Source: Mobula birostris (Eukaryota). From it: a stretch of DNA of 64,000 nt. Of this stretch, positions 14,935-51,978 are shown piece by piece (the first letter of the stretch is position 1; every line of letters begins with the position of its first letter). The stretch covers positions 164,795,415-164,859,414 of the forward strand of contig NC_092375.1 of NCBI RefSeq assembly GCF_030028105.1, in the 5' to 3' direction. The notes below the pieces were generated by a model. It saw only the letters and a program-made list of their open reading frames with translations. It had not been told where the DNA came from and did no database searches. The position numbers and the translations under genes are program-made.

Positions 14935-15142
14935 CAAGCAACACACATCAAAGTTGCTGGTGAACGCAGCAGGCCAGGCAACATCTGTAGGAAGAGGTGC
15001 AGTCGACGTTTCAGGCCTGACGAAGGGTCTCAGCCTGAAACGTCGACTGCACCTCTTCCTTCAGATGCTGCCTGGCCTGCTGCGTTCACCAGCAACTTTG
15101 ATGTGTGTTGCTTGAATTTCCAGCATCTGCAGAATTCCTATG
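14935..15142. mobile_element. Fold-back Penelope-pLTR element with a central hammerhead
   Basis: 82-nt inverted arms 14935-15016 and 15033-15114 (2 mismatches); 13-bp TSD ATTTGCAGAGTAT at 14922-14934 and 15143-15155. Confidence 0.88.
15012..15049 (+). ncRNA. Minimal type-I hammerhead ribozyme motif
   Basis: CAGGC-CTGACGA-AGGGTCTCAGCCT-GAAA-CGTC-GACTG; intact core with GUC triplet; one mismatch in stem I. Confidence 0.7.
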
Positions 15143-15379
15143 ATTTGCAGAGTATTTTGTGTTTAAAATAAGTGTGCTAGTTGAAAAACATATTTTGTCC
15201 AGTTATGAACAGGATATATGTTGTGTTGCTCTGACAGCAGAACTGCTTTGTTTAATTAAAAAGGTTAACATTTTGTCAGACCTTATCTTCCAGTACTCAC
15301 TATATCAGACAACAAATGACTTTCTTGCTGCCTAGCTGGTTTAACTGGAGAATATTAACAGATTTAATTACAATAAAAA

Positions 15380-15690
15380 AGTTATGGCCTCGATGAGCCT
15401 TAGACATGGAGAGGATGTATATGATAGTGGGGGGAGTCCGGGACCAGAGGTACAACCTCAGAATACTAGGTCATCCCTTTAGAACAGAGATGAGGAGAGA
15501 TTTATTTAGCCAGAAGGTGGTGAATTCTGGGTATATTTAAAGCGAAGGTTGATAGATTCTTGATTATTAAGTGTGTCAAAGGTTACAGAGAGAAGGCTGG
15601 AGAATGGAGTTGAGAGGGATAGTAAATCAGCCATGATGGAATGGCAGAGTAGACTCGATGAGCTGAATGGCTCAATTCTGCTCCTTCTTC
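15380..15690 (+). mobile_element. CR1 3' fragment
   Basis: gatgtat...atgaggagagatttatttagccagaaggtggtgaat...gatgagctgaatggc CR1 3' motifs. Confidence 0.65.
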
Positions 15691-15776
15691 TTATGGTCCA
15701 ATGCCATTTTGTACAGAAACTCAGTATGCTCTATATTCCAACTGGCTACATTGATAGGAAAACAAAAAGAATAGAT

Positions 15777-16062
15777 TGTAGCGGTGTGCTACACACAGTG
15801 CTAAAATAACAACACGTAGTCGGTGAGTTGCAGTTGCGAAAAAAAGAGGTTTATTCAAACTTTGTGGCCTCCTTTAAAGCCTTCCTGTTCCCGCCCTCCC
15901 CGGGCGGGACTGCTGTGGGGAATGCATATTCGCAGACCCTTCCCGCGCGCAGGATTTTCCCTCTGCTGGTGAAGACCTGGCGCCCTTTTTGGGGCCAGCC
16001 TCTCTGCCGGCGCGCGCCGTTTTGTGAGCCAGTTCAAGTGCGCTGGAAAGTGGGTCACCACA
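15777..16062 (-). repeat. Gypsy 3' LTR (286 bp)
   Basis: TGTAGCGG...GGTCACCACA; adjacent polypurine tract (C11 on +, 16069-16079); AATAAA on the minus strand. Confidence 0.95.
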
Positions 16063-16199
16063 TAAACACCCCCCCCCCCAGAACCGGCGATACATCCCCC
16101 AATGTCCACAGTCTGGATCGGCCTCTGTTTGGGAGGTCTGGCTCTGCGCCCCGGTGCCTGAGCCCGGACCGGCTGCGCCAAGTCCACATGGGCCGGTTT

Positions 16200-19100
16200 G
16201 AGTCGGGTCCACTGTGAAAACCTCCTCTCTCCGCCCAATGTCCAGCACGAATGTGGACCCGTTGTTCCTGATCACCTTAAATGGCCCCTCGTAGGGCCGC
16301 TGTAGCGGTGCCCGGTATCCGCCCGGTCGTACAAAAAGAAACTTACAGTTCTGCAGGTCTTTGGGTACGCAGGTCAGGCTCTGTCCGTGCTGTGAAGTGG
16401 GTACGGGGGCCAGGTTACCGAGCCTCTCAAGTAGTCTGTCCAGGACTGCTGCAGGTTCCTCCTCTTGCCCCCTTGGGGCCAGTATGAACTCTACTGGGAC
16501 GACCAGGGGTGCTCCGTACACCAACTCGGCCGACAAGGTGTGCAGATCCTCCTTGGGCACCGTGCGGATTCTGAGCAGGACCCAGGGAAGTTCGTCCACC
16601 CAGTTAGGCCCTTCCAGGCGGGCCATGAGAGCCGACTTCAGGTGACAGTGGAAACGCTCCACTAGTCCGTTCGACTGTGGGTGGGAGGCAGTTGTGTGGT
16701 GTAGCTGTGTTCCTAAAAGGCTGGCCATAGCTGGCCACAGGCTGGAGGTGAACTGGGCGCCCCTGTCAGAGGTAATGTGGGCTAGTACCCCGAAGCGTTC
16801 TACCCAGGTTGCGATCGGTGCTCGGGCGCAGGATTTGGAGGTGGTGTCGTTGAGCGGGACCGCCTCTGGCCATCCGGTGAACCGGTCTATGATAGTTAGG
16901 AGGTACCGTGCTCCTCGTGACACTGGCAGGGGCCCCACGATATCCACATGAATGTGTTCGAACCTCCGGCAGGTGGGTTCAAACTGCTGCGTCGGAGCCT
17001 TGGTGTGCCGCTGCACCTTGGCCGTTTGGCACTGCATGCACGTTTTGGCCCATTCACTGACCTGTTTATGACGTCATGCCAAACGTACCTGTTGGAGACC
17101 AGCCGGACGGTTGTCCTGATGGAGGGGTGCGCTAAGTTGTGAATGGAGTTGAAAACTCGCCGGTGCCAGGCTGCCAGGACGATGGGGTGGGGTTGGCCGG
17201 TAGCTACGTCACATAGTAGAGTCCTCTCACCTGGGCCTACGGGGAGGCTTTGGAGCTGCAAACCGGAGATCGCAGTTCTGTAACTAGGGATCTCATCGTC
17301 TGCCTGCTGTGCCTCTGCCAGCACTGCATAGTCCACCCCCTGGGACAGGGCCTGTATGGTAGATCTGGATAGTGCGTCCGCCACGACGTTGTCCTTTCCC
17401 GAGACATGCCGGATGTCCGTCATGTATTTGGAGATGTAGGACAGATGTCGCTGCTGGCGGGACGACCAGGGATCATACACCTTAGTGAATGCAAAGGTAA
17501 GCGGTTTGTGGTCCGTGAACGCGGTGAAGGGCCTACCTTCTAAGAAGTACCTGAAATGCTTAATTACCAGGTATAGTGCCAATAGCTCCCGGTCAAAAGC
17601 ACTGTATTTGAGTTTGGGTGGTCGTAGGCGTTTGCTGAAGAATGCCAGGGGTTGCCAACAACCCTCAATGAGTTGTTCCAGCACTCCACCGACTGCTGTG
17701 TTGGATGCGTCCACCGTGAGGGCAGTAGGAACATCCATTCTTTTTTTTTTTATTTTCTTTTTACAAAATTCTTTATTACAAATGTCGGTGCTATACAATA
17801 TTTACAAAACCAGTGACTAACATATTTACTACACTACAAACAGACAATACATGTTAAACCAATATATTGCCATCCTCATCAATGATGGCATTTACACCCC
17901 GCGGAGCCCAACGGTCCCGGAACACCTCTACGGTCACCGTGGACTGTGCATATTCCTTTTCAATGTTCACTCGGGCACGAACATACCCCCTAAACATAGC
18001 CAGGCAGTCCACCCGGGGAGAACCTCCTGCCACCCTTTTCCAGGAGCCACGGATGGCAATTTTCGCCAGCCCCAGGAGCAAGTTGACAAGGACATCCTCA
18101 TCCCTCTGTGCCCCCCTCCTTACTGGATGACCATATATGAATAGGGTGGGACTGAAATGCAACCAGAAGGCGAGAAGCAGCCCACGCAAATACGCCAAAA
18201 GGGGCTGCAGCCTCACACACTCCACGCACATATGGTACACGGTCTCCTCTAGCCCACAGAAGTGACACGCGGCTGGGAGATCCGTGTACAGACTAAAGAA
18301 CTTATTGCAGGGCACCGCTTTGTGCAGCACCCTCCAGCCGAGATCCCCAAGGTGCATGGGGAGGACTCCCTTGTAAAGGGACTTCCATTGGGGATCCCCC
18401 TCACCTCCAGGTGGGAAGACCGACCGCCATGGCGTGTCGGGACGGTGGACAAGGGCTAGGAAGTGGAGGGTGTGGAGCAACAGCCCATAAAGGTACCTCC
18501 TGCCTGCATCCCTGAATGGGATTGTGGGTGTCGATGAGAGACGGCTCAAGTTGTGTGGATTCGTCTCTCGGGTAAGGCTGCGGGGCCTGGGCCCGACGAG
18601 CAGCTCAGCTTGAGTCGATCCACACACCTGAGCCGCACCGACATCCGTTGAGGCAGGGCAAGGGTCAGCCAGGACCCCGCCCTCTGCCAGAGGAGGGGAT
18701 TCCCGGCCTGAGGCAACCATGTTCCAGATTCTCAGTAGGTCCTGATAGAAGCCTGGCAGCCTCTGCAAAGCAGCACGGCTGACGCCCGCCGGCGGTAGCT
18801 GCATATCTTCGGCAAGACAGCATCCCCTCCGGAGGAAGAAAGTCGCCAACACGTGCCACCTGGGAGGGTGCTCGGCGTACAGGCGTAACGAAAGTAGCTG
18901 CGGCCTCTTCGTCCCAGGTAATGTCCTGCCCTTACCCGACATCAGGGTGAACAGGGGGCACATGATTCGGGCTGCTGAGGGGAGGAAACGGTGGTAGAAA
19001 TTCATCATACCCACAAATTCCTGAAGGCCTTTGGTTATGTTGGGTCGGGGGAAGTGGTGGACCGTGCCTACCTTGGCGTGCAGAAGGGTTACCCCGTCTT

Positions 19101-20190
19101 TAGTAATCCTGTGGCCCAGGAAGTTGATGGTGTCGAGTCCAAACTGGCATTTGGCCGGGTTGATTGCAAGACCAAATTCGCTCAGTCGGACGTAGAGTTG
19201 ACGGAGGTGGGACAGATGTTCCTGACGACTACTGCTGGCTATGAGGACGTCGTCCAAATAGATGAATGCAAAGTCCAGGTCGCGTCCCACCGCGTCCATT
19301 AGCCGCTGGAACGTCTGTGTGGCATTCTTTAGGCCGAATGGCATTCAGAGGGATTCGAAAAGGCCGAACGGGGTGGTAAGTGATGTTTTGGGGATGTCGT
19401 CCGGATGTACCGGGATTTGATGGTATCCCCGGACGAGTTCTACCTTGGAAAAGATCCTTGCGCCGTGTAGGTTTGCTGCAAAGTCTTGAATGTGCGGCAC
19501 AGGATAGCAGTCTGGCGTTGTAGCCTCGTTCAGTCTGCGGTAGTCGCCGCATGGTCTCCAGCCCCCTGTTGCCTTGGGCACCATATGCAGGCCCATGGGC
19601 TATCGGACCGTCGTATGATCCCCAATTCCTCCATCTTCTTGAACTCCTCCTTCGCCAGTCGGAGCTTGTCCGGGGGAAGCCTTCGAGCACGGGCGTGGAG
19701 GGGTGGTCCCTGGGTCGGGATGTGGTGCTGTACTCCATGTCTGGGCATGGCTGCCATGAACTGCGGTGTCAGTACTGATGGGAAATCTGCCAGGACCCTG
19801 GTGAATTCGTCGTTGGACAGCGTGATGGAGTCCAGGTGTGGGGCTGGCAACTTGGCTTCACCCAGGGAGGACGTTTGAAAAGTCTTGGTGTGGACTAGTC
19901 GCTTTCCTGGCATTCGACCAGCAGGCTGTGAGCTCGCAGAAAATCCGCCCCAAGGAGTGGTTGGGCCACGGCGGCCAGTGTGAAGTCCCACATGAACTGG
20001 CTGGAGCTGAACTGTAGCCGCACTGTGCGGGTGCCGTAGGTCTGTATTGTGCTGCCATTTGCGGCCCTCAGGGTGGGTCTCGGTTCTCTGTTGCAGGTTT
20101 CATAACTCATTGGAGGTAAAACGCTGATCTCCGCTCCCGTGTCGACCAAAAAGTGGCGTCCCGACTGCTTGTCCCAGACATACAGGAGGC
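16200..20190 (-). pseudogene. Gypsy pol (PR-RT-RH-IN), fragmented and interrupted by Tx1
   Basis: ORF pieces 19895-20149, 19530-19991, 19345-19596, 18886-19344, 16896-17741 and 15874-17037. Confidence 0.92.
17742..18885 (-). mobile_element. Tx1/L1-clade LINE 3' fragment nested in Gypsy pol
   Basis: ORF2 C-terminus with GDLGWRVLH..V..N and C-x2-C...H...C (ACHFCGLEETVYHMCVEC); AATAAA (17772-17777, minus strand) and poly(A) at ~17742-17762. Confidence 0.85.
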
Positions 20191-26055: not shown

Positions 26056-27980
26056 GTATGAAGGTGTTATTGATACCATGTTGATTTAACCATGAGGAAA
26101 ACAATAGTTTTGTTTGTATATTAAAAGTTTATACCACTTCTTCAGAGAAATAAATTGAAAGCATTTGCAATATTGCAGATTTCCAGATTACTCTATCTGA
26201 TGGGGTTATTTGATGAAAATAGTCTGCATGCATTTTGCAGTACACATGTTTATGGCATTCCCCAATTTGATTAGTTGAAAGCTAAAATGGCTAATCACAG
26301 CTCTGGTAGACTTTGCTTAATTCTGATAAATACAATTAAGATAATAAACTAAATTACTCATGCTTAAAAAGTTTTATCAAAATATATAGCATAAAATATT
26401 AAGTGTTACATGTCACGGAAGTATACTTTAAAACAATTTATTTGCTTTCTTTCATATGTTTATTAACACTTGTTTTGATATCTTGCACTCCCAGCAGAAG
26501 CCTGGTACAGAGTTACTTTCTCTCTAAAATGAGAGCACAGCTATCTTTTCTTCTCGCAATCACTGATCACCTCAATTGCTTACACTTTCAAATTTCTGCT
26601 TATATATTTTCTTTTATAATAAGGAAGCTTTTTATATTCTATTTGCTATCCTTATGGATCATTAGTTTGACCTGTTTCTCAAAATTGATAATAAAAACAC
26701 ACTGCCAGCTTTATGGAAGACTTGACATATGGAAATTTGACTTTATATAAAGTTCTCTCATAATTTTAAAGCATTTTTCAAGACAGGAAGGTTATAGAAA
26801 TGTTAAGATCTCCAGGAATTATGGAATATGGGTAGCAGCTAGTTTATTAAAAAGACAACCAGTCATTAAAAATTGTCCATAAGTAATCGTCCTAGAGTAA
26901 TCAAATAGATAAATATTCCTGGAAACACAGTTGCTAGTTTGCAGTGGAAGGCCAATTAAGGAATATGATTTAGAAACAGAAAAGGCAAATCTCTTCTATT
27001 GACACTTGTAGAATGCTTTATCAAGCAAAGTAACATTCATTGATACTTTAAGGCCATTGAAGTAGGATGTCTTGATCCTGTGCCTTTGTAACTACACAGG
27101 GGAAGACAATAAAACAAATGTTCATATTAATCAAACCTTGTTTGAAGTTTTCCGCTTCAAACGTTTGGAAAACTTTATTTACAGACTATTTTCAAGAATG
27201 GATCCCTTACATAACTGAAGGGCTTGCCTGTAGTTGGCCCCTATCATGGCATCCTGCAGTCATGTCTATTGTCACTTTTCCATCTGAGAGGGTTGCAAAT
27301 CACTCCCACAATGAAGAAATTCAAGTGCTAGTGGAACTTAGTAAAATCCACAGATTAGCCCTCTCAATGTTTCCATTTCAGGGTTCTGTTTCCTTTCTCC
27401 TGAAATCTGTTCCCATCCTATATTCCTTTCACCACCACTAAATTTTTTCCTCAAACTCTAAGATACATTTTGAGCAAACCTGAAATACCTTTTGTATTTC
27501 TGATTTATGTATGATTAAGTTATATGTTTTTTATTCTTCTAAGTCCCTGTTTTGTTACTTCTTGGAATAGAAATAACAGGTCATAGATACTGAATAATTC
27601 TCCATTTTCTACATTTCTTCCTTTTTAGACAATCTAACTTAAACTTTTATTCAATATATAAAAATGTTGTATGGCACAATGCAATCCATATTCCCAAAAA
27701 AAAGCAAATTTGTCAACAACGAAATCACTTACTTAAGTCATATATACTTTATTTCACAATATATCTTAAAGTAAAATGCACTTCAAAGGAAATTGTTAAT
27801 TAACAACATATTTTTGGGAATCTAATTTTCAAGGCAATCTAACTTTTTCAAATTTGTTAAGATAAAATTCATTTCAACAGTATAACTGTTAATGAATTGG
27901 AATTTTTAGTATTGACAAAGACAAGTATGCTTTCACATTCAGGTTAAAAGACAACAGAAAGGAAGTGAAAATATTTTTAG

Positions 27981-28151
27981 ACAACACACAGCAAAGTTGC
28001 TGGTGAACGCAGCAGGCCAGGCAGCATCTCTAGGAACAGGTACAGTCGACATTACCTCTTCCTAGACATACTGCCTGGTCCGCTGCGTTCACCAGCAACT
28101 TTGATGTGTGTTGCTTGAATTTCCAGCATCTGCAGAATTTCTGTTGTTTGC
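27981..28151. mobile_element. Fold-back Penelope-pLTR element with the centre deleted
   Basis: Inverted arms ~27981-28042 and ~28053-28113; exact 16-bp TSD GTGAAAATATTTTTAG at 27965-27980 and 28152-28167. Confidence 0.88.
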
Positions 28152-28994
28152 GTGAAAATATTTTTAGTTTACAAAGTACTCCATTCTGCTTCTTTTTCTG
28201 GAAGTCTCTTAATAATTACGTGCTTACCCATGGATTGTTCAACTGTTATGAATGTAGATCTAGACATGGAATTAAATGTAGTTATTGAGGGATAGAAAGC
28301 TATAAGGATTTTAAAATCAACGTTGATGACTGTGAAGCTAATTCAGCAAGCGAAACCAAAAGTAATGAGGAAAAATGCACTTATTATATGACAAGATATG
28401 AGAAATATTCAGTGAACTGTAAATTTCTGGGTGATAGAGAATGAGAACACAAGGCAGAAAGAAAAGTGTTGAAAAGGCATAAAAGCCACAGATTTCAGCA
28501 TAAGTGCTGGGATTTAGATAGAGGCACATTCAATGCCAGTGGTCTTGATTTTAACTGCAATATAAAATGAAACATCAAGATGGCAAATATTGTGCTTCAG
28601 TATTAACTGGGTAATGAATTGGAATCAGTGACAGAACTGTTGAGCTGGATTTACTTTCTCAGTATTAAGTTACAAAGAGTTGAAACTCATCAAAGAATTG
28701 ACATTAGTAAGCACTCTGACAGGAGAGAATCAGAAGAGATGAGGAGAAATATTGGAGAAGTTGAGATAAACTGGTTTCCTTGATGACCAGCTTGGAGAAG
28801 AAAATAAAAAGTAGTGATATTAGTTCACTGGACGTTTTGAGAAGCCACTGCAATGGAAGATACTGAACCAAGCAAGGGGAGTTAATTTAGTTATTTATTT
28901 TCTAAGAGCATTTGAGAAAAAGTAGTATCATTGTTTATATCAAAACCAGCGGAGTAATGACAAAATATCATTTTCAGTGAGGTTGCAGTAAGAC

Positions 28995-30788: not shown

Positions 30789-31869
30789 GTCAGGATTCTA
30801 CCCCAATCATTTACATTTTAATTATATCTAATAATCATAAAAAGTAATGTAATTGGCATATAACATAATGGTTAATAGAAAATAAAGTTTGCCATTAGGA
30901 GAACTCACTAATTGAAAATTAGTGGTGAATTAGAGTTAAAAATTTAATCATATTATCTAATTTATATCACAAAATACATCAGCTAATGTAAAATTTAGCT
31001 ATGAAGTGTGTAGTTTTGGAGTACTGCAGATGTTAAATTGCTACAAATGGTAATTAATGCAGGTGCATACATTTGAGACCTTAGCCATACTGGAGAATGT
31101 ATCACTGAGGTTGTTGGCCCTCATAACTAATGCTCACAAGAAGAATGCAGCATATTTAACTCATGATCTCAGTCAGCACACAACAGTCATTTGGCTCTGT
31201 CTGCCATTTTAGAGAATGTGCTGGCTAATTAAATGTTGTACATTTGAGCAAGCATTCTGTAACATGAAATTGATCATGTTTAAAATAATTATCACTTTTA
31301 AATTAGTTACTATTTGATTTACCCTTGTTTTTTGTTGCCTTCAGAATTCTTTAAAGTTCTAAGAACTCTCTTTCTTAACAAGATATTATGTGGTAGGTGG
31401 TAGGTGTTACAAGCCTTTGTGTCAGTCAGATGTTCTGTAGAAATCACTTGCTCCCAGATGTAGATTGTTAGGCAGGATGTCCCTTTGAGATGATTGAGTA
31501 TATAAGGAAGATCCATAAAGCAGGATGGGTTGCTAGGAGAAAGCAAAGAAGTACATTTAAAGGAAGTCTTTATTCCTCATTAATGTTAATTTTGGAGTAT
31601 TGCCCTCTGAATATCTTTCATTTGAGTTCTTTCGGGTTTCTTGTTTTGTGACTGTACACAGACGAATCTCAAGGTTGTATAGTTGGTATATACCTTGATA
31701 ATAAATGTACTTTGAACTTTGAATATTCTGGGCTAATACTGGGCTGTTTGGTGCATCTAAGCTTTAGTGAAGATGCCCTCTCCAAAATCAGTAGTTTTCC
31801 CCCCTCCCCATAACTACAGTTACAATGGCTCCCAAGGTAACTTTGGCCATGAAATGTTAAAGCCATTAT

Positions 31870-32040
31870 CAGATTGCTGGTGGAACTCAGTGGGTCAAGC
31901 AGCATCTGTGAAGACAAGGGATAGCTGAAGTTTTGGTTTGAGACAATGTATCAATCTTGATGGAGGATCTCGATTTGAAACATTTACTATCCCTTTTCCT
32001 CCACAGATGCTGGTAAACCTTCTGAGTTCCTCCAGCAATT
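31870..32040. mobile_element. Old fold-back pLTR element (degenerate)
   Basis: Arms ttgctggtggaactcag...cagcatctgtg / cacagatgctgg...ctgagttcctccagcaa with an eroded hammerhead-like centre. Confidence 0.6.
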
Positions 32041-32322
32041 ACATCATCTCCAAATGTTTATGTCTCCATGAAATTTAAGATATAGGTTTCTTGCATGCTG
32101 AAATTAGAGATGCTTGTGTAATGGAAGCCATTGATGTTCATTCAGTTTGCTGTGTCAGAGAGCATCTAACATCCAAATAAAAAGTTATGTTGTGATCTGA
32201 AAGAGTAATCAGTCAAATTGGGCAATCAGTTACCCAATAGCTAAAAACCAAATTAAACTGCAGTAAGAAAAAACACAGAAAATATTCAGTTAACATTAGT
32301 GGAAGGAGAAATAGAGTTAATT

Positions 32323-33903: not shown

Positions 33904-34113
33904 GTCACAAGCAGAAGAAAATCTGCAGATGCTGGAAATCCAAAACACTGGAGAAATTCAGCAGGCCAGGCAGCATCTTTGGAAAAGTTCAAACTGTCAT
34001 TGTTTCAGGCCCTTCACTGATGCAGGGTCTTGACCCGAAACGTTGACTGTTTACTGCTTTCCATAGATCTTGCTTGGACTCCTGAGTTCCTTCAGCATTT
34101 TGTGTGTATTGCT
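33904..34113. mobile_element. Fold-back pLTR element with a mutated hammerhead
   Basis: Inverted arms; CTGATGC-A-GGGT(CTTG)ACCC-GAAA-CGTT-GACTG at 34017-34049; TSD GAAGATAT(A/G)CAGT at 33891-33903 and 34114-34126. Confidence 0.78.
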
Positions 34114-34660: not shown

Positions 34661-36135
34661 ATAGAACATAGAATAGTACAGCACAGTACAGGCCCTTTGG
34701 CCCACAATGTTGTGCTGACCCTTAAACCCTGCCTCCCATATAACCCTCCACCTTTAATTCCTCCATATACCTGTCTAGTAGTTTCTTAAATTTCACTAGT
34801 GTATCTGCATCTGACTCAGGCAGTGCATTCCACACACCAACCACTCTCTGAGTAAAAAACCTTCCACTAATATCCTCCTTGAACTTCCCACCCCTTTCCT
34901 TAAAGCCATGTCCTCTTGTATTGAGCAGTGGTGCCCTGGGGAAGAGGCGCTGGCTGTCCACTCTATCTATTCCTCTTATTATCTTGTATACCTCTATCAT
35001 GTCTCCTCTCATCCTCCTTCTCTCCAAAGAGTTAAGCCCTAGCTCCCTTAATCTCTGATCATAATCCATACTCTCTAAACCAGGCAGCATCCTGGTAAAT
35101 CTCCTCTGTACCCTTTCCAATGCTTCCACATCCTTCCTATAGTGAGGCGACCAGAACTGGACACAGTACTCCAAGTGTGGCTTAACCAGAGTTTTACATC
35201 GCGACTCTTAAACTCTATCCCTTGACTTATGAAAGCTAACACCCCATAAGCTTTCTTAACTATGCTATCTACCTGTGAGGCAACTTTCAGGGATCTGTGG
35301 ACATGTACCCCCAGATCTCTCTGCTCCTCCACACTATCAAGTATCCTGCCATTTACTTTGTACTCTGCCTTGGAATTTGTCCTTCCAAAGTGTACCACCT
35401 CACACTTCTCTGGGTTGAACTCCATCTGCCACTTCTCAGCCCATTTCTGCATCCTATCAATGTCTCTCCGCAATCTTCGACAATCCTCTACACCATCTAC
35501 AACACCACCAACCTTTGTGTCATCTGCAAACTTGCCAATCCACCCTTCTACCCCAACATCCAGGTCGTTAATAAAAATCATGAAAAGTAGAGGTCCCAGA
35601 ACTGATCCTTGTGGGACACCACTAGTCACAACCTTCCAATCTGAATGTACTCCCTCCACCACCACCTTCTGCCTTCTGCAGGCAAGCCAATTCTGAATCC
35701 ACCTGGCCAAACTCCCCTGGATCCCATGCTTTCTGACTTTCTGAATAAGCCTACCACCTGGAACCTTGTCAAATGCCTTACTAAAATCCATGTAGATCAC
35801 ATCCACTGCACTACCCTCATCTATAATGCCTGGCCACCTCCTCAAAGAACTCTATCAGGCTTGTTAGACACGATCTGCCCTTCACAAAGCCATGCTGACT
35901 GTCTCTGATCAGACCATGATTCTCTAAATACCCATAGATCCTATCTCTAAGAACCTTTTCCAACAGCTTTCCCACCACAGACGTAAAGCTCACTGGTCTA
36001 TAATTACCCGGACTATTCCTACTACCTTTTGTGAACAAGGGGACAACATCCGCCTCCCTCCAATCCTCTGGTACCACTCCCATGGACAGCAAGGACATAA
36101 AGATCCCAGCCAGAGGCTCAGCAATCTCTTCCCTA
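34661..36135 (-). mobile_element. CR1 LINE RT plus 3' end (relatively young)
   Basis: ORFs NYRPVSFTSVVGKLLE, YMDFSKAFDKVP, SGVPQGSVLGPLLF, KFADDTK. Confidence 0.94.
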
Positions 36136-39822: not shown

Positions 39823-42752
39823 GTTAGTAAATAAATTATGGAAAAGTTTGTTTTGTTTTTTCAAAATTCAGCTATTCCAAGGCCCCCTGATGGCCTCCTA
39901 TTACTTCCCTCTGTAAACCTCAAATCCATAACTTTTGTAAAACTTTGTTGTTCATCCTTCCTCACAATATTGCTGCTACAATGGTTCACCAACACTCTGT
40001 TCTCCCGGCTGCCAACCACCATCCTCAATTTAAATGACAATTACTCATGTAAATCCATTTCCTGGTCAGTAGCATTGATATAATTTTCACATGTCGGAAG
40101 GAGACTGAAACAGAGGGAAAGAGAGAGACAGAATGGAGGGGGGTGGGAAGAGAGGGAGAGAGACTGAGACAGACACAGAGAGGGAAGAAGACCTGCTTAC
40201 CACTGTTTGCACTTGTACAGTTTGCACATTCTCTTGCATGTACAATAATCTGTACAGATCTGTACAAGCAAAATGGGTTACACCTGAATATGTAGGCAAC
40301 CAATATCCTCATCAGGTGGCTTGCTAAGTAATGGCGAGTCTGATGCTCTAAAGTGTGTTTATTTCAACACCAGGAATATTCTCGGTAAGGAGTCTGGATT
40401 AGTACATGGAATTACAAAGTTGTTGTCATTATTGAGATTATGTGTCTAAAGTACAGGACTGGCTGCTCAGTGTTCCTGGGTTTCATTGTTTGATTCGTGA
40501 TAGAGAAGGGGGATAAAAGAGGTGGGGGGTTTGCGCTACTGGTAAGGGAGAATGTCACAACCTACTCGGAGGACCTACTGGAGGGCTCATCCATGAAGGC
40601 AATTTGGCTGGAGTTCAGAAATAGGATAGGTATAATTATGCTGATGGAATTGTATTATAGGCCTCCTAACAGAAGTGGAGAAATAGATGTGTAGACAGAT
40701 TATGGAAAGGTGGAGAAACAACAGGGTTGTCATACTGGGAGACTTTAACTTACCCTGTATTAATTGGAACTTCCTTAGTACAAAAAATTTAAATGGGATG
40801 GATTTCTTCAGTGCATCCAAGAGAAGTACTTGAAACAGGAACATACTGGACCTAATGTTGCACAGTGAGCCAGGCCTGGTGACAGATCAGATAGCGGGTG
40901 GACATTTTGTGAAGAGTGACCACAACTCATTATTTAAGATAGTTATGAGTAAAGATAAAATTGGATATTACTGGAAGGTACTAAATTGGAGAGGGCACAT
41001 TTTGAGAGGACAGGGCACAAACTAAGAGGCATTGATATGGAGCAGCTGCTAATAGATAAGTCCATGTCTGAGTTGCCTAAGGACCAGCTGATTAGAGATC
41101 AGGATTGCATGATCTGGTAAGGAGGAAGAACAAGGATGGTAAGGAAAAGGAAGCTGGGATGGCCCAAGAAATCCTAAATTTACTTTGAAAGGAAAAGGAA
41201 AATTAGGCTGTGCAGGAATGTGCTCAAGCAGATGACTAGGAAGAGCAAAAGAGGCCATGTGATGTCCTTGGCAAGTAGGGTCAAGGATAATCCCAAGGCA
41301 TCTTGTACTTAGATTAAGTAAAAAGGGAAATCTAAGAAGGGGCTAGGTCCACTGAAGGGTAAAAGAAGGAATTGTGCTTTGAGTCTGAGCAGGTGGCTGA
41401 GGTACTGAGTGAATACTAGACAGTATTTGCCTAGAAGAAGAAATTTGCGGATTGTGAAAACAGAGTGAGGCATGCTAATGTACTGGGACTTTTTGAGATT
41501 AAGTAGGAGGTAACGCTGAATTATCTGGAAAGCATTAAAATGGAAAAGTCTCCAGAGCCTGATAACACTTTCCCAGAATAATGAAAGAAGTAAGGGAGGA
41601 GATTAATAGGTCAATTGACAAGGATCTTTGTGTCCTCACCAGTGGCAAGTGAGGTCCCAGCAGGGTGGAGGACAGCAAATGTTGTGTTTTTGTTCAAAAA
41701 GAGAAATGACAACATCAGTGTTAAAGAAGCTGCTATAGAGGATACTGAAGTGTAGGATTTATGTGCATTTGGCAAGGCATAGCATACTCAGGGACAGACA
41801 GCATGGCTTTGCGCAGGCCAGATCATACCTTACAAACTTGACCAAGTTTTTTGAGGTGTCAAAGGTGCTTGATGAGGATAGATCGGTTGATGTTATGCAT
41901 GGACTTTAAGGTATTTGACAAGGTCCCTAAGTGTAGGTTGATTCAGAAGATAATGATATACAGGATCAAGGGTGAATTGCAAGTTTGGATTCAGAACGAA
42001 TTTGCCTTTAAAAGACAAAGTAGGGGTGGAAGGCTGTTATTCTGGTTGGATGTCTGTGACAAGTGATGTTCCACAAGGATCAGTGCTGGGATTTCTGTTT
42101 AATGGTTGTGATAAAGGTGTAGATGGGTGTGTTAGCAAGTTTGTGGATGGCACCAAGATTGGTAAATTTGTGGCTGGTATAAAGGATTATCAAAGAATAC
42201 AATTAGATATAGATCAATTACAGACATGAGCAGAAAAATGGCAGATGAAGTTTGATCCAAGCAAGTGTGAGGTGTTGCACTTTGGGAGGTCAGATCATAG
42301 GGAGAACACTTAATAGCTGGGATACAGAGGAATCTTGGGGTCCAGGATTGTTATTCACTGAAAATGATTACACAGTGGATAAAGTGGTAAAGAAGGTGTA
42401 TGGAATACCATGCTTGCCTTTTTTGGTAGGAGTATTGAATGTAAGAGTAAGTAAGTCATGGAATAACTATATAAACCTTTAGTCAGACCACACTTGGATT
42501 GCGCAGTTTTAGTCGCTCCATTATAGCAAGGATGGGGCAGTTGTAGAAAAGGCTTTAAGAAGCTTTACCTGGGTGCTGCCTGGGTTAGAGAGTATGAGCC
42601 ATGAGGGCAGGTTGGACAAACTTGGGTTGTTTTCCCTAGAATATCAGAGGTGGAGGGGAGACCTGACAGAGATTTTTTTAAATTATGAAAGGCATAGATA
42701 GGATAGATGATTAGAGTCTGTTCTCCAGGTTAGAAATATCAAACACTAGAGG

Positions 42753-43037
42753 AAACACACACAAAAGTTGCTGGTGAACGCAGCAGGCGAGGCAGCATCT
42801 CTAGGATGAGGTACAGTCAACATTTCGGGCCGAGACCCTTCGTCAGGACTAACTGAAAGAAGAGCTAGTACTCTCACTAGCTCTTCTTTCAGTTAGTCCT
42901 GACGAAGGGTCTCGGCCCGAAACGCAACTGTACCTCTTCCTAGAGATGCTGCCTCGCCTGCTGCGTTCACCAGCAACTTTTGTGTGTGTTGCTTGAAATT
43001 CCAGCATGTGCAGATTTCCTCGTGTTTGCATTTTTAA
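42753..43037. mobile_element. Fold-back pLTR element with one hammerhead motif on each strand
   Basis: ~115-nt arms 42754-42869 and 42876-42990 with a 6-nt loop; 12-bp TSD AAACACTAGAGG at 42741-42752 and 43038-43049. Confidence 0.92.
42814..42851 (-). ncRNA. Minimal hammerhead ribozyme motif
   Basis: Minus strand TAGTC-CTGACGA-A-GGGT(CTCG)GCCC-GAAA-TGTT-GACTG; intact core with GUU triplet. Confidence 0.72.
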
Positions 43038-43706
43038 AAACACTAGAGGGCATGCTTTTAAGACTAGAGAGGAGGTGTTTCATGGTGATGTGAGGAGCAT
43101 GTTTTGATGCAGAGCTGCCGGTGCGTGGAATGGGTAATCATGGGTAGTGAATCAAGCAGTTTGGTAACATTTAAGAAGCTTTTAGATACACATGTGAATA
43201 TGAAGGGAATGGAAGGATGTGGCTGATAAACAGGAGGAGGGCATAATGGGCCAAATTACCTGTCCAGTGCTGTACTATTCTATATTCTAGGCATGGCATT
43301 TTTATACACTTTTGGTACAGCATCTTTGTCAAATTACAGTTGTCATTTCTTAGCCAACACTAGAACAAGAAGCCCTTGATCAGTCGCTTCTGACGCCATC
43401 TTCGTGACATCCTGACATAATTATCAAATGGCCTATACACTGTTGTGTTTAATTAGTGTTTGGTGATCTTATGGCTAAAGCATCCCTTTGTTCAGTTATC
43501 TAGATGATGGTACCAGCAGGAGGCCCATTATCACCAGTCACCTCAGTCCCCTAGAAGGCCTCTGTTTATCTTATCTTATGTTCCATAAATTAAGTATCCT
43601 CATCACCTGCACATATTTGAGGCATTGAGAGTACAAAATTGCCTCCCAATATACTTTTACAGTATACTGTGCTTGTGCCCTATGTGCTATGTCAGTACAT
43701 TCTAAC

Positions 43707-44694
43707 GCAAACACGAGGAAATCTGCAGATGCTGGAAATTCAAGCAACACACACAAAATGCTGGTGGAACGCAGCAGGCCAGACAGCATCTATAGGAAGA
43801 AGTACAGTTGACGTTTCGGGCCGAGACCCTTTGTCAGGACTAACTGAAAGAAGGGATAGTGAGAGATTTGAAAGTGGGAGGGGGAGAGGGAGATCCGAAA
43901 TGATAGGCAAAGACAGGAGAGGGAGTGGTGAAGCTAAGAGCTGGAAAGCTGATTGGCAAAAGGGATACAAGGCTGGAGAAGGGGGAGGATCATGGGATGG
44001 GAGGCCCAGGGAGAAAGAAAGGGGAGCTCCAGAGGAAGATGGAGAGCAGGCAAGGAGTTTCGCTGAACACCTACGCTCGCTCCGCCAGCAAAAGCAGGAT
44101 CTCCCAGTGGCCACGCATTTTAATTCCATGTCCCATACCCATTCTGATATGTCTATCCATGGCCTCCTCTACTGTCAAGATGAAGCCACACTCAGGTTGG
44201 AGGAACAATACCTTATATTCCACCTGGGTAGCCTCCAACCCTGATGGCATGAATATTGACTTCTCTAAATTCTGTTAATGCCCTCTTCCCCTTCTTACCC
44301 CATCCCTTATTTATTTATTTATTTATTTATTTATTGTCTTTCCCCTTTTTTTCTCTCTGTCCCTCTCACAATAACTCCTTGCCTGCTCTCCATCTTCCTC
44401 TGGTGCTCCCCTCCCCCTTTCTTTCTCCCTAGGTCTCCCGTGCCATGATCCTCTCCCTTCTCCAGCCTTGTATCCCTTTTGCCAATCAACTTTCCAGCTC
44501 TTAGCTGCATCCCTCCCCCTCCTGTCTTCTCCTATCATTTCAGATATCCCCCTCCCCCCCCCCCCACTTTCAAATCTCTTACTGTCTCTTCTTTCAGTTA
44601 GTCTTGACGAAGGGTCTCGGTCCGAAACGTCGACTGTACTTCTTCCTATGGATGCTGCCTGGCCTGCTGTGTTTCACCAGCATTTTGTGTGTGT
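43707..44694 (+). mobile_element. 5'-truncated Penelope-like element (GIY-YIG C-terminus plus pLTR) with an inverted pLTR copy
   Basis: FAEHLRS...DLPVATHFNS...LRLEEQYLIFHLGSLQP; arms ~43740-44058 (inverted) and ~44370-44694; 17-bp TSD TGTCAGTACATTCTAAC at 43690-43706 and 44695-44711; hammerhead motifs at 43805-43842 (-) and 44599-44636 (+). Confidence 0.92.
44307..44335 (+). repeat. (TTAT)7 microsatellite inside the Penelope 3' region
   Basis: Read directly from the sequence. Confidence 0.9.
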
Positions 44695-45205
44695 TGTCAG
44701 TACATTCTAACTCAGGTCTCTGGTTACATAGGAGGAATACTACACTGGAGATAGATGTGCTGTCACAGCCTGGAAATAGCCCTGTTATCTCTGAATACAC
44801 AAATACTAGGCTACATGGCTTCCTCTGGTGCAGTTCTCTAAGAGAACATTCTGTTGGGCTGCTTGTTTCTTAATTTGTCCAACTGAGAATAAAGCAGATC
44901 TAGTTTGAGGCAGAAATGCACCTTTGTCTCACAATATGCTTTATAGTATATTATGCAAAATAGCTCTACATGCCATTTTTCCTACCTATAAATGTCCAAC
45001 TTCATAAAATTCACACTCTTATTTATTTAATTCATCTCCTCCAATCTCCTTACACCATCTCGAAACTCCAAGCATTCCTCTTAATTGAGCTTCTACATCA
45101 TCTATTGACCTCGCCAACATTAGCTGTACTTTTAGTCACTTTAGTCTCAAGTTCTAAGCTAAGTCTAAAACACTCAACTTACTATTTCACTTTCATTTCT
45201 TACAG

Positions 45206-48569: not shown

Positions 48570-48854
48570 CTCTTGAACCACCAACCTTTACAGTGGAACT
48601 GGAACCTTGTGCTGTGAAAGCAGGGGAACCTGCTCGATTTTGTGGTATAATAGTTGGCACACCAAAATTGGAAGTAACCTGGTACAAAGATGGTCAAAAG
48701 CTTTTCTCAGGGTTTAAACGCAAGATACTTCATGATGAGAACCAATATACTTTGTTACTGATTGAAACATTCCCTGAAGATGCTGGCACCTACACTTGTG
48801 AAGCAAAAAATGAAGCTGGAGTAGCTGTTAGTGGTGCTTCACTTGATGTTGAAG
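48570..48854 (+). CDS. TTN: Titin exon (~ex42), Ig domain
   Basis: ttttag|[25 protein letters not shown]...[21 protein letters not shown]...LDVE|gtataa. Confidence 0.96.
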
Positions 48855-49280
48855 GTATAACTAAAGTTTACTCAGCATATTTTCATGTCAGTACTATGGT
48901 ACGTAGGAAATTGTTGTGATATAGACAGTACATACTGCCTGTCCTGAGGAGCACACAGAAAGAGGAGATGAAATTGGTATTTAGCATGCATGATTAGTAG
49001 TAAACGTGGCAGTATATTTTGAGTAAAAAAGAAAGAAAATAGATTTTCTTGTTTAATACCTATTATGTGCTTTTATAGACGCCTAAATACCGTTCATATG
49101 TTTCTCTAAATAACAGCTTTGTATTTTGCATATTTATGTTTGTAATAGTTACCACTTCTCTTTTAAAATTTTTGATTTATACCTATGCTCTATGATAGTC
49201 TATGTACTTACCACTCTTAAGTCATTTTAAATAACCTTTCTTAGAGATTAATATCAATTAATTTATTTATGTATTTTCAG

Positions 49281-49406
49281 TTCCAGAGGTAGTTTCCCCT
49301 GAGGTCGAAGTACCTGTTTATCCACCTGTCATTGTAAGTCCAATCCAAGATACTACCACCAGTGAAGGACATTCTGCTCAATTTCAGTGCCGTTTGACGG
49401 GAACAG
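49281..49406 (+). CDS. TTN: Titin exon (~ex43)
   Basis: tttcag|PEVVSPEVEVPVYPPVIVSPIQDTTTSEGHSAQFQCRLTGT|gtatg. Not in the ORF track. Confidence 0.95.
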
Positions 49407-51782
49407 GTATGCTGTAAATTCAGACTTTAGCATTATGTCTCACTTTAGTTTACCCCTTGCTTATCCTGAGTTGTTAATTTTTGCTGTGTTTGGTTTCCAA
49501 AGTGTTTTTTTACTCTTCTATTTGAATTTACATGTTCGAGCTAGATCATTTTAATGTACTAATGGTAACAACTAAGCTTTACCTGTGCTGACCCATCACC
49601 TATGCAGTGACATAGACTAAAATGGTTTACTGGTTAATAATTGAGAGTCAAAATGTCTGTTTTTACTTCTTCTCGGACTAGAATACCAAGGGTGATTGTA
49701 ATCCCCAACTGCAGCTCTAAAATGATTATTGATCATATTTCAATGAATGCCACTTAACTCCAAAGAAACAGCACTTTTGCCTACCATATTATGAAGTTTG
49801 CAATCTTCATTAATGACTCAAATTTAATTCAAGTACATTGTTCTGGGTGATTTCATTTTTCATTGCTTTGTGATACAAACCTAAAAGGTCTAGGAAGCAC
49901 AGCCTACCAAGTGAGCAAATATAAAACATCTGGTACCTAGTCTAGGTTAGGTATTGACAATACAAAAGTGCAGGTGCCCCTCATCTCTCCTCTAGATTCT
50001 CCCATCTTTCCCTGCCATCTCTTCTCTGGAAGAATACATTAGTCAAGAAACTTAACAATTGATATTTTTATTCCGGTTCAACAGGCATCTTCTTTCTTTC
50101 TTTATTTTTCCCTTTAGCATACTGATTGTATGTTTTACTGTAGCACGAGTCTGTATTCTATCCCAGACTCATAGAGCAACACAATAGGAGATTTTTTACA
50201 AAAAGTTTATTGAAACTAAAACCACTGTGAAGTAAATATAACAAAACTATTAGAAGAAAAAATGACGTGGGGTTATATTCCAAACATTAAAAAATGCCAT
50301 ACATTACTGCAGCCTTTCTGTGCTAATTGTCTAATACAGGTCTTGACATTTAATTGTATTGTACTCTTTAATATGATTAATTCTAGTTCCAATTCGAAAT
50401 CCAACATATTCAGTGGTCAAATAAAGTAACTGGATCACATCTGCAAAGGTTAATCAAACTGTTATTTTCATTTTATCAAAGTTTACCTCTAAACCACTTC
50501 TCCACGCCCAACGTCTATAATGTAAGAGAATCTTGTCTGTGTCTACTATAGACACAAGCCTCTATATTTATCATTGCCCAGTCTGTTCATTATAAACATC
50601 AATCTTAATCGAACTAATACTGTTAATTCTGTGTCATTAATTTTATTAACAAAGCTATTTTAGTAGGGAAGACGACTAAGTATATTAGCACTTCAGGAAG
50701 TTTTTTTAACTCCATGGAAATTCTACATTTGATCAGACTGTAGAGTTTCTTTGAAGTACAGCAGATAACTTTAATGATATCTTCGAGTTAATCTTGTTTG
50801 TGAAAGAAAATTACTCTTCTGGTAGCTTTCTTAGTTTACAGTGTCTATTTTTAAGAACTGCTTTGATAAGAGACATGGTTTCTTGTAACTTAGATATATG
50901 TGACAAGTTATAAACCCAACCTGTGGTTCATCAGAAGTTAATGCATTTCTTGCTGAAGGCAGCTGCCTCCAGAAATCAATCTCCAAATGACTGATATTTT
51001 GATTCTTCATAACATTAGCCACTTATAATCATCTTTTCCTGTTCTTACCTAGAAGAACCTTTTACATTAGCTTTTGAAATATTTTTTTCATTGTTTTACA
51101 GTCATTGTAAGATATAGTAAATGGATCACCATGATCAATTGAGCCATGACCTTCACACATGAATTAAAATCTAATCCACAAATTAATTTTAATTATCATA
51201 ACCAAATTTTCTAACACCTGCCACTATGATAATTCTGATAATTTTGTAATACATTCATTTCTTTTCCTAAGTGGAACGGTTGTAGGATGCTGTCTAAAAG
51301 GAACACTAAAATATTGGGTTTATAACTGGACTCATCAGGTCATTTCTGGATTATTATCAGGTATAAAAGATTTAACAGCTATGATTAAATATTTCATCCC
51401 ACTCCCCTTATAAACCAAACTGACAATTCAATAATTATTTGATATGGAGTCTAGACTATGTCCTCTGTCCAGGGAATCCAAACAGATCCTTTCTGATCTT
51501 GTAGTTTGCAGATTCAGATTACTGTTTTTCACATATTTGTGGGAAGCCACATACCTGTGCCTTTACAGGATGTTGTAGGCTATGTAAGAGTATTATCTTG
51601 TGCTGTTATTAAATGTTGTGATATACACCCAATGCTTTCCAATAAAAGTAGGAGAGATCTGCAATGCATTGGAGTGATATTAAGAAACCTAAATGCGATC
51701 TCAAAAGTTTAACCATTAGTGGGATTGTGATATGTGTGATATACCCTGTGAACTTTAACTAAACTAAATTTACTTCAGTTCA

Positions 51783-51978
51783 CACATCAAAGTTGCTGGT
51801 GAACGCAGCAGGCCAGGTAGCATCTCTAGGAAGAGGTACAGTCGACGTTTCAGGCTGAGACCCTTCAGGACGAAACGTCGACTGTACCTCTTCCTAGAGA
51901 TGCTGCCTGGCCTGCTGCATTCACCAGCAACTTTGATGTGTGTTGCTTGAATTTCCAGCATCTGCAGAATTCCTGTTG
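51783..51978. mobile_element. Fold-back pLTR element with a disrupted hammerhead
   Basis: 71-nt arms 51781-51851 and 51872-51942; TSD TTTACT(T/C)CAGTTCA at 51769-51782 and 51979-51992. Confidence 0.88.

What the first reader, a model, noticed from the sequence alone, without database searches (positions are those of the whole stretch)
14935..51978. Family of short fold-back, hammerhead-bearing, TSD-flanked Penelope derivatives inside titin introns
Seen: six related insertions (14935-15142, 27981-28151, 33904-34113, 42753-43037, 43707-44694, 51783-51978). Each is an inverted duplication of the same terminal sequence and has its own 12-17 bp direct repeat. One arm always stops near ...GTGTGTTG while the other runs on through CAGCATCTGCAG... 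The largest copy still carries GIY-YIG coding sequence, which ties the family to Penelope-like elements (PLEs). Known: PLE pseudo-LTRs encode minimal hammerheads and PLEs often carry inverted pLTRs. Inferred: the short copies are either a non-autonomous ribozyme-containing hairpin retroelement family, or a reproducible fold-back product of PLE target-primed reverse transcription. Different fold-back points in each copy favour the second explanation. I do not know of a description of this family in elasmobranchs.
Basis: partly seen in the sequence, partly recalled or inferred. Interest (0 to 1): 0.8.

Follow-up and report, generated by a model that had tools for sequence, protein, structure and literature searches.

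The report
Short head-to-head Penelope retrotransposon stubs
The six small palindromic insertions in these titin introns are real, but they are the usual product of Penelope-like retrotransposon integration: two heavily shortened copies laid down head-to-head in one event. They are not a new self-contained ribozyme-carrying element.

Summary
All six insertions are real. A profile scan finds nine such fold-backs and two single arms in the window. Each fold-back is two inverted copies of the 3' end of one Penelope-like element (PLE).

In 8 of 8 readable cases one outer end stops at ...GTGTGTTG (±7 nt) and the other runs about 30-40 nt further (the "tail"). Inner fold points differ in every copy. 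Partner arms share private variants. Contigs of related organisms show exact empty sites for copy 5 and for the 14788-15164 insertion that holds copy 1. The family is laid by 70,000-188,000 contigs per run.

Copy 2 has none, and Rfam finds none.

An inverted 5'-truncated copy, a tail at one end and a variable TSD are already described as typical of PLEs (Arkhipova 2013, Craig 2021). In vitro, the Anolis PLE cuts and extends both strands from two adjacent RNA start sites (Frangieh 2024). The scan noted the same fold-backs in other windows of this genome.

Verdict: new member of a known kind, modest interest.

The parts
14935..15142 (.). Fold-back c1. Short-end arm (antisense) about 14935-15016; tail arm (sense) 15017-15139; ATG filler 15140-15142. 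TSD ATTTGCAGAGTAT at 14922-14934 and 15143-15155. Inserted into the tail of the older copy at 14788-15164.
   Evidence: (arms 97.3% alike). Organism B contig reaches 28 nt into its tail with 2 differences (record 22). Organisms C and G lack 14777-15174 (records 26 and 9).
27981..28151 (.). Fold-back c2. Short-end arm 27981 to about 28047; tail arm about 28048-28151. The symmetry axis lies in GTCGAC (28045-28050), which is the hammerhead cut site GTC|GAC. No ribozyme core in either arm. TSD of 16 bp at 27965-27980 and 28152-28167.
   Evidence: (arms 90.9%).
33904..34113 (.). Older fold-back c3. Tail arm (antisense) 33904 to about 34004; short-end arm (sense) about 34005-34113. TSD of 13 bp with 1 mismatch at 33891-33903 and 34114-34126.
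   Evidence: (arms 77%).
42753..43037 (.). Fold-back c4. Short-end arm 42753-42870; tail arm 42871-43029; 8-nt filler 43030-43037. TSD AAACACTAGAGG at 42741-42752 and 43038-43049. The only intact minimal hammerhead among the six copies is on the minus strand at 42819-42846.
   Evidence: (arms 96.4%). Organism B contigs enter both ends. Contigs of C and D start exactly at 43038 (records 17, 18, 25, 1).
43707..44696 (.). Fold-back c5. Tail arm (antisense) 43707-44059, with the 38-nt tail at 43707-43744. Short-end sense arm 44060-44696, which begins inside the endonuclease ORF (coding 44060-44241, then a frameshift, stop near 44279). 313-nt unique middle. TSD of 16-17 bp at 43690-43706 and 44695-44711.
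   Evidence: (arms 91.1%). Exact empty site in organisms C, D and G (records 25, 3, 9 with same-depth contigs at 44744-44755).
51783..51978 (.). Fold-back c6. Short-end arm 51783 to about 51870, with a 3-nt deletion in the ribozyme core. Tail arm 51871-51978 starts at GAAAC. TSD of 14 bp with 1 mismatch at 51769-51782 and 51979-51992.
   Evidence: (arms 97.1%).
1973..2191 (.). Short-end arm on the left, tail arm on the right. Weak 7-bp TSD.
   Evidence: (arms 71%).
11068..11400 (.). A long short-end arm runs through the ribozyme region; the tail arm is short. No clear TSD. Spanned whole by contigs of organisms B and C, and covered in part by a contig of D.
   Evidence: records 15, 23, 1.
31856..32065 (.). 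Old, diverged probable fold-back c7. 9-bp TSD at 31847-31855 and 32066-32074. Its ends are too decayed to classify.
14788..15164 (+). Single sense arm with a tail (14788-14934 plus 15156-15164), interrupted by c1. Intact minimal hammerhead at 14818-14845. TSD AAAATAAGT at 14779-14787 and 15165-15173.
   Evidence: Absent together with c1 in organisms C and G.
8963..9080 (-). Old single antisense arm of the same family.

Best explanation
Each element is the product of one integration event of an abundant endonuclease-bearing Penelope-like retrotransposon.

Shown here: two 5'-truncated copies of the element's 3' end lie head-to-head between a target-site duplication. The two outer ends are two fixed termini. 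One is at ...GTGTGTTG, 65 nt downstream of the hammerhead cut site. The other is about 38 nt further, at ...GTTTGC. The inner ends differ from copy to copy.

Inferred: the element's endonuclease makes staggered cuts, 7-17 bp apart, in A/T-rich DNA. Both free 3' ends prime reverse transcription of element RNA, one at the inner start site and one at the outer. The two converging cDNAs stop at arbitrary points. They are joined when one polymerase jumps from the RNA onto the end of the other cDNA, with 0-2 nt of overlap or a few filler bases.

The 170-290 bp copies are simply the cases where both cDNAs stopped early, near the ribozyme hairpin. The hammerhead is a passenger, kept or cut depending on where the copies stop.
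For: 1. Arms match the PLE 3' end. In c5 the match continues into the endonuclease ORF.
2. In 8 of 8 readable fold-backs one end is the short site and one is the tail site. Under independent choice of site this has probability at most 0.5^8 = 0.004.
3. Both termini are seen family-wide. Hundreds of contigs per run from related genomes break off into unrelated A/T-rich sequence at the tail end (43707-43709), and in one run (X13) at the short end (44696). In other copies the tail runs on to ...CGTGTTTGC and then into T-rich flank (loose ends at 15139).
4. Partner arms share private variants. They are each other's nearest neighbours in c1, c4 and c5 (permutation p = 0.003).
5. Every copy has its own fold point. 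Other copies read straight through these points (loose ends at 15016 and 42850).
6. Orthologous empty sites show one-step insertions. Contigs of organisms C, D and G join 43689 to about 44697. Contigs of C and G join 14776 to 15175.
7. TSDs are far beyond chance.
8. The tail-less arm is the longer one in c0, c3, c5, c6 and c8, and the tail arm in c1 and c4. A single snap-back cDNA cannot give that pattern.
9. Published: the inverted 5'-truncated copy plus a one-sided 30-40 bp tail is typical of PLEs (PMC8557442; PMC3846280). The Anolis PLE cuts and extends both strands, starts at two adjacent internal RNA sites with the tail between them, and prefers A/T-rich DNA (PMC11167929).
Against: Only nine fold-backs from one window were dissected. 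Genome-wide fold-point and end-pairing statistics could not be drawn from the contig tables, which were truncated and dominated by cross-mapping between subfamilies.

In vitro, Frangieh et al. saw no strand difference in start-site use, so the strict one-of-each pairing is not predicted by published data.

The joining step (template jump) is inference only. Junction overlaps are 0-2 nt and uninformative.

Fold points cluster in or next to the hairpin-prone ribozyme region in six of nine copies. That also fits self-priming at palindromes.

No intact autonomous copy was seen in the window. The reverse-transcriptase part of the family was not examined.
Confidence: 0.72

Rival explanations
1. Single priming followed by snap-back. 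One cDNA is made from one nick. Its 3' end folds back at a palindrome (GTCGAC, or ribozyme helix II) and copies itself. This is the self-priming idea raised for rotifer Penelope elements.
For: Fold points of c0, c1, c2, c3, c6 and probably c7 lie in or beside palindromic or hairpin sequence. Loops are short in most copies. Palindromes at inverted junctions were taken as a sign of self-priming in PMC3846280.
Against: Snap-back predicts identical outer ends, but 8 of 8 copies are unequal. If synthesis merely stopped early, the tail arm would always hold the loop and be the longer arm, yet the tail-less arm is longer in five copies. In c5 it is longer by 313 nt, including ORF sequence that the other arm never contained.
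Confidence: 0.14
2. A non-autonomous hairpin retroelement family (MITE-like or retrozyme-like) that carries a hammerhead and is copied as a unit by PLE proteins.
For: Similar sizes (170-290 bp) and TSDs. Very high copy number of the arm sequence. PLE-derived non-autonomous elements exist (retrozymes, MRC1).
Against: No two copies share a fold point. Other family members read through each fold point. The ribozyme is intact in 1 of 12 arms and wholly absent from c2. c5 has the same architecture but contains ORF sequence. There are no tandem arrays in the window.
Confidence: 0.07
3. Artefact or post-insertion rearrangement: an assembly palindrome, or a local inverted duplication of an ordinary 5'-truncated copy.
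For: Palindromes are a known assembly problem for PLEs.
Against: There are nine cases of very different age (arm identity 71-97%), each with its own TSD. Independent contigs of organism B enter the ends of c1, c4 and c5. Empty sites in C, D and G remove exactly the element plus one TSD.
Confidence: 0.02

Closest known systems
Canonical insertion architecture of endonuclease-bearing Penelope-like elements (Evgen'ev & Arkhipova 2005; Arkhipova 2006; Arkhipova et al. 2013, PMC3846280; Craig et al. 2021, PMC8557442)
   Same: Heavy 5' truncation. An adjacent inverted 5'-truncated copy forms head-to-head inverted repeats. A 30-40 bp tail sits at only one end. TSD length is variable. A hammerhead lies in the terminal repeat.
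   Different: Both copies are truncated so far that nothing remains except 65-160 nt of the 3' end. No direct pseudo-LTR or ORF remains except in c5. This minimal form is the majority here (9 of 11 copies in the window). I found no description for cartilaginous fishes in the searched literature.
PAc, the Poseidon element of Anolis carolinensis, reconstituted in vitro (Frangieh et al. 2024, PMC11167929)
   Same: Both DNA strands are cut and extended. Reverse transcription starts at two adjacent internal RNA sites, with the tail between them. A/T-rich target preference. Similar geometry: in PAc the start sites lie about 85-92 nt past the hammerhead cut (my arithmetic from the figures); here they lie 65 and 103 nt past it.
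   Different: In vitro, no strand bias in start-site choice was seen. Here every fold-back pairs one site of each kind. Joined head-to-head products were not characterised in that paper.
Minimal hammerhead ribozymes of PLEs (Cervera & de la Pena 2014, PMC4209133)
   Same: CUGANGA core. An extra base between positions 9 and 10.1. A G10.1-C11.1 pair. GAAA. A loop-less palindromic helix III (ACGU). A short helix I.
   Different: The motif is decayed or truncated in most arms here. No Rfam model detects it. Activity is untested.
Non-LTR retrozymes (Cervera & de la Pena 2020; Li et al. 2026 preprint, 10.64898/2026.07.22.740005)
   Same: Short non-coding derivatives of PLE terminal repeats with hammerheads.
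   Different: Retrozymes are head-to-tail tandem repeats thought to cycle through circular RNA. The preprint reports them depleted from introns. The elements here are inverted, not tandem, intronic, and mostly lack a working ribozyme.
L1 twin priming (Ostertag & Kazazian 2001; from my own knowledge)
   Same: Both cut DNA ends prime reverse transcription, which gives an inverted segment inside one TSD-flanked insertion.
   Different: Twin priming copies two different parts of one RNA, giving an inversion. Here both arms copy the same 3' region from two fixed start sites, giving an inverted duplication.

Membership tests
Penelope-like element (endonuclease-bearing) | GIY-YIG endonuclease linked to a PLE-type reverse transcriptase | tested here: inconclusive
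   c5 holds only the last ~61-72 codons of the ORF and gives no Pfam hit itself. Its relatives carry the VIY...YIGET motifs immediately upstream of the matched stretch. One (P0094) also has a weak RVT_1 hit. All Pfam hits are below the curated cut-offs. No reverse-transcriptase sequence of this family was seen in the window.
Penelope-like element (endonuclease-bearing) | Inverted and/or direct terminal repeats made of 5'-truncated copies | tested here: met
   Nine head-to-head pairs.
Penelope-like element (endonuclease-bearing) | 30-40 bp tail extension at only one end of the insertion | tested here: met
   A tail of about 30-40 nt (38 nt in c5) sits at exactly one end in 8 of 8 readable fold-backs. 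Both termini are seen family-wide in related genomes.
Penelope-like element (endonuclease-bearing) | Variable-length TSD in A/T-rich target | tested here: met
   TSDs of 7-17 bp with 58-89% A+T. Flank consensus of other copies is A/T-rich.
Minimal hammerhead of PLEs (min-HHR) | CUGANGA, helix II with G10.1-C11.1, GAAA, an extra base after A9, palindromic 15.2-16.2, no loop 3 | tested here: met
   A strict descriptor matches 14818-14845 (+) and 42819-42846 (-), and matches nothing in 50 shuffles. The other arms are mutated (C3U, G8A, 3-nt deletion) or truncated.
Minimal hammerhead of PLEs (min-HHR) | Self-cleavage | not testable with these tools
   The minimum-free-energy fold does not give the three-way junction. 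Only assembled contigs, not raw RNA reads, were available.
Rfam hammerhead families | Match to a curated covariance model | tested here: not met
   No hit at gathering score in the window. No hammerhead hit at E up to 10 over 42600-44800, which includes the intact motif.
Non-LTR retrozyme | Head-to-tail tandem repeats, each with a hammerhead | tested here: not met
   No tandem arrays of this sequence. The arms are inverted.
MITE / fold-back DNA transposon | Equal terminal inverted repeats, fixed TSD length, shared internal sequence | tested here: not met
   Outer ends are unequal by about 30-40 nt. TSDs range from 7 to 17 bp. The junction differs in every copy.

The most novel reading that the evidence does not exclude
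The fold-backs may be an in vivo record that this PLE normally primes from both cut strands of the target, with a fixed rule. One strand uses the inner RNA start site and the other uses the outer site 38 nt away. This would fit a dimeric protein on one RNA, followed by a jump between the two nascent cDNAs. That would explain the long-standing 'one tail, inverted repeat' puzzle of PLE insertions.

A side lead comes from copy 2. Both of its arms may begin exactly at the hammerhead cut site. If that point is enriched genome-wide, it would be the first evidence in genomic copies that ribozyme-cleaved RNA serves as a template.
Probability: 0.35. Interest if true: 0.55.

Novelty: new member of a known kind. 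Interest (0 to 1): 0.33.

Why it matters
How PLEs integrate is still poorly understood. This genome and its relatives hold a very large number of dated, TSD-flanked integration products of the simplest possible form.

A census of them would test, from natural insertions, three things. First, whether extension of both strands and the two start sites seen in vitro for the Anolis element operate in vivo. Second, whether the two sites are used as a pair. Third, whether ribozyme cleavage ever defines the template.

On the practical side, these palindromes will be mis-called as MITEs or hairpin RNA genes by automatic pipelines. One gives a sub-threshold miRNA-family hit. They also place perfect hairpins of roughly 55-115 bp inside introns of a heavily transcribed gene.

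As a discovery it is modest, because the architecture itself is already published.

Tried and rejected
- **Rfam.** No hammerhead at gathering score over the whole window, or at E up to 10 over 42600-44800. The only hits were sub-threshold miRNA hairpin models on the c4 palindrome.
- **Hammerhead folding.** ViennaRNA monomer and dimer folds of the hammerhead region do not recover the hammerhead junction, so they give no support either way.
- **Tail folding.** A small stem-loop around the inner start site is no better than in shuffles (z = -0.1 to -0.8).
- **Pfam on the c5 fragment.** No hit. This was resolved indirectly through relatives.
- **Fold-point statistics from contigs.** The read laying joint tables were meant to give a genome-wide fold-point distribution. 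They were truncated and dominated by cross-mapping between subfamilies, so no statistics were drawn. Only termini and empty sites were used.
- **RNA evidence.** Expression, circular RNA and cleavage ends were therefore not examined.
- **Literature string search.** No paper prints the ribozyme motif.
- **Readings considered and rejected.** MITE, retrozyme and assembly artefact (see rivals).
Full report
**1. Observation**

Each consists of two arms that are reverse complements of one another.

I used copy 5 (43707-44696) as the query, and then a 695-nt reference made from its sense arm plus its tail. Blastn finds both orientations of the same sequence at every one of the six sites. An nhmmer profile of the arms gives E-values of 1e-20 to 1e-49 for these arms. 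The window therefore holds nine fold-backs and two single copies.

Target-site duplications are 13, 16, 13 (one mismatch), 12, 16-17 and 14 (one mismatch) bp for c1 to c6. With the same search applied to 400 random placements, a score of 10 or more occurred in 0.5% and 12 or more never.

The host exons on the plus strand are I-set immunoglobulin domains. Their best solved relatives are titin (6dl4 at 1.7e-57; titin I1, 1g1c, at 4e-51). 'Titin introns' is therefore correct.

**2. Anatomy**

All arms were aligned in the orientation of the element's ORF. The arms are the last 65-160 nt (up to about 640 nt in c5) of one unit.

The outer ends fall into two classes. One stops at ...GTGTGTTG, give or take up to about 7 nt. 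The other continues about 30-40 nt (38 nt in c5) through CTTGAATTTCCAGCATCTGCAG to ...GTTTGC. In all eight fold-backs whose ends can still be read, one arm is of each class. If each arm chose its end independently, this has probability of at most 0.5^8 = 0.004.

The inner ends differ in every copy. In reference coordinates the hammerhead cut lies after position 592, the short end at 657 and the tail end at 695. The inner ends of the two arms then fall at:

| Copy | Inner ends of the two arms |
|---|---|
| c4 | 537 and 541 |
| c1 | 566 and ~577-585 |
| c6 | ~561-570 and ~580-584 |
| c2 | both near 587-593 |
| c5 | 21 and 334 |

c5 has 313 nt of unique ORF and 3' sequence between its arms. The longer arm is the tail-less one in c0, c3, c5, c6 and c8, and the tail arm in c1 and c4. 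Junctions show 0-2 nt of possible overlap or 2-8 nt of filler.

**3. One event, one template**

Partner arms are 97.3% (c1), 97.1% (c6), 96.4% (c4), 91.1% (c5), 90.9% (c2) and 71-78% (c0, c3, c7, c8) identical. Insertion in this form has therefore gone on for a long time.

In c1, c4 and c5 the two arms share private variants and are each other's nearest neighbours. Random re-pairing of the ten young arms reaches the observed within-pair identity in 0.3% of trials.

**4. Evidence from related genomes**

Logan contigs of four related organisms (coded B, C, D and G) were laid on 42600-44800 and on 10800-15400.

- **Abundance.** Between 70,000 and 188,000 contigs per run match the arms. Summed depth on the arms is four to five orders of magnitude above the 10-17 seen on unique intron. 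The family is therefore among the most abundant repeats in this group. The depth is not a copy number.
- **Termini.** Hundreds of contigs per run break off into unrelated A/T-rich sequence exactly at the outer tail end (43707-43709). In run X13 they also break off at the short end (44696). At 15139 other copies continue to ...CGTGTTTGC and then into T-rich flank. Both ends are therefore termini seen across the family, and targets are A/T-rich.
- **Private fold points.** At the fold points of c1 (15016) and c4 (42850), other copies read straight on into internal element sequence. These fold points are private to each copy.
- **Empty site for c5.** In organism D a 277-nt contig (depth 4.3) covers 43506-43689 and has 91 more letters to the right. 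A contig of the same depth covers 44744-44755 and ends at 44786. That is what joining 43689 to about 44697 predicts. A 916-nt contig of C and a 7,285-nt contig of G behave the same way. C, D and G therefore lack c5 and one TSD copy exactly.
- **Empty site for 14788-15164.** One contig each of C and G joins 14776 to 15175 with six letters between. This removes the single arm at 14788-15164 together with c1 nested in it.
- **Presence in B.** Organism B is about 99% identical in the flanks. Its contigs run from unique flank into the ends of c1, c4 and c5.
- **c4 and c8.** Contigs of C and D begin exactly at the first base of c4's right TSD (43038), which suggests that c4 is absent there too. The old c8 is spanned whole by contigs of B and C, and is covered in part by a contig of D.

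**5. Link to Penelope-like elements**

The c5 sense arm begins in an ORF (44060-44241, then a frameshift, then a stop near 44279). The 61-residue fragment has no Pfam hit of its own. A phmmer search of 1.84 billion representative proteins finds 150 relatives, 22 of them at E of 1e-10 or better.

In relatives that extend upstream, the matched stretch directly follows ...(V/L)IYCIRC...LYIGETKRRLGDR, which are the GIY and YIG motifs. Pfam GIY-YIG is hit weakly there in three of them, and one also has a weak RVT_1 hit. All these Pfam hits are below the curated cut-offs. c5 therefore keeps the C-terminal half of a PLE-type endonuclease, not the GIY and YIG motifs themselves.

**6. The hammerhead**

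In the sense strand the consensus reads UAGUC-CUGACGA-A-GGGUCUCGGCCC-GAA-ACGU-C, followed by GACUG after the cut. It matches the published features of the PLE minimal hammerhead (PMC4209133):
- an extra base after A9;
- a G10.1-C11.1 pair;
- a loop-less palindromic helix III;
- a short helix I.

A strict descriptor finds it intact only twice in the window and never in 50 shuffles. The two sites are 14818-14845 (+), in the older single arm, and 42819-42846 (-), in one arm of c4.

Among the other arms of the six copies, two have single core mutations (C3U and G8A in c5). One has a 3-nt core deletion (c6). One has lost helix III (c4 tail arm). One has a non-canonical core (c3 short-end arm: C in place of A9). 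One keeps the core but not helix I (c1). The rest start downstream of the core. c2 has no ribozyme sequence at all. Rfam detects nothing. The ribozyme is thus a passenger whose presence depends on where the copies were truncated.

**7. Mechanism**

Shown: two copies of the same 3' region lie head-to-head within one TSD. They end at two fixed termini, derive from the same source sequence, and are inserted in a single step.

Published: PLE insertions are typically 5'-truncated, often with an adjacent inverted 5'-truncated copy and a 30-40 bp tail at one end only (PMC8557442; PMC3846280). The purified Anolis element cuts and extends both DNA strands. It starts reverse transcription at two adjacent internal RNA sites whose spacing is the tail, and it prefers A/T-rich DNA. 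Its start sites lie about 85-92 nt past the hammerhead cut (my arithmetic from the figures in PMC11167929), against 65 and 103 nt here.

Inferred: staggered cuts give two 3' ends. One primes at the inner site and one at the outer. The two cDNAs converge. One polymerase then jumps onto the end of the other cDNA and copies it to the far flank, which joins the break.

The main rival is a single cDNA that snaps back on a palindrome. It fits the clustering of fold points in the hairpin-prone ribozyme region. It predicts equal outer ends or an always-longer tail arm, and neither is seen.

A self-propagating hairpin family is contradicted by the private junctions. No tandem arrays exist, so the elements are not retrozymes.

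**8. Comparison and novelty**

This is the canonical PLE insertion architecture in its most reduced form. The scan's own notes record the same fold-backs in other windows of this genome. I found no description for cartilaginous fishes, and no paper prints the motif. I could not query Dfam or Repbase, and the taxon itself is coded here.

Three points go somewhat beyond the literature I read. First, every fold-back examined pairs one short end with one tail end. Second, the arm-length argument counts against snap-back. Third, both arms of c2 may begin exactly at the ribozyme cut site (GTC|GAC at the axis), although the palindrome makes this ambiguous.

**9. Verdict**

Novelty is limited to a new member of a known kind. 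Interest is about 0.33.

Noticed in passing
window 14818-15049: Two sense-strand minimal hammerheads lie about 200 nt apart in the direction of titin transcription. One is intact, in the older arm. The other, in c1's tail arm, keeps its core but has lost helix I. Since these motifs are thought to act as dimers, the pair could in principle interact in the pre-mRNA. An earlier scan note (s1-145882) makes the same point.
   Followed up: partly
window 42827-42918 (minus strand): The perfect hairpin at the centre of c4 gives a sub-threshold Rfam hit to mir-1756 (56.8 bits against a gathering score of 100). It looks like a generic long-hairpin match. It shows how such fold-backs could be mis-called as miRNA genes.
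   Followed up: no
window 17857-19344 (-), 35078-35845 (-), 15877-17037 (-): Other retroelement ORFs sit in the same introns. Two have RVT_1 reverse-transcriptase hits, one of them with zf-RVT. One has an integrase core (rve). They are unrelated to the Penelope family.
   Followed up: no
window 59305-63186 (+): A 1,294-codon open stretch has I-set domains at both ends and a long non-domain middle, which looks like a titin unique-sequence exon. An earlier scan note (s1-145166) reports a pseudogenised N2B exon about 6 kb beyond the window.
   Followed up: no
window 44239: About half of the family depth in four related genomes lacks one base here (table 4). This is the position of the frameshift that closes the c5 endonuclease ORF early.
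   Followed up: partly
window 42600-42750 and 43190-43340: Both flanks of c4 have raised contig depth (10^3 to 10^4 against about 15). c4 therefore sits inside another, older interspersed repeat.
   Followed up: no
window 14560-14640: A stretch containing GGATTCGAACC resembles the T-arm of a tRNA on the opposite strand. It may be a tRNA-derived SINE just upstream of the 14788 insertion. Contig depth is raised there.
   Followed up: no
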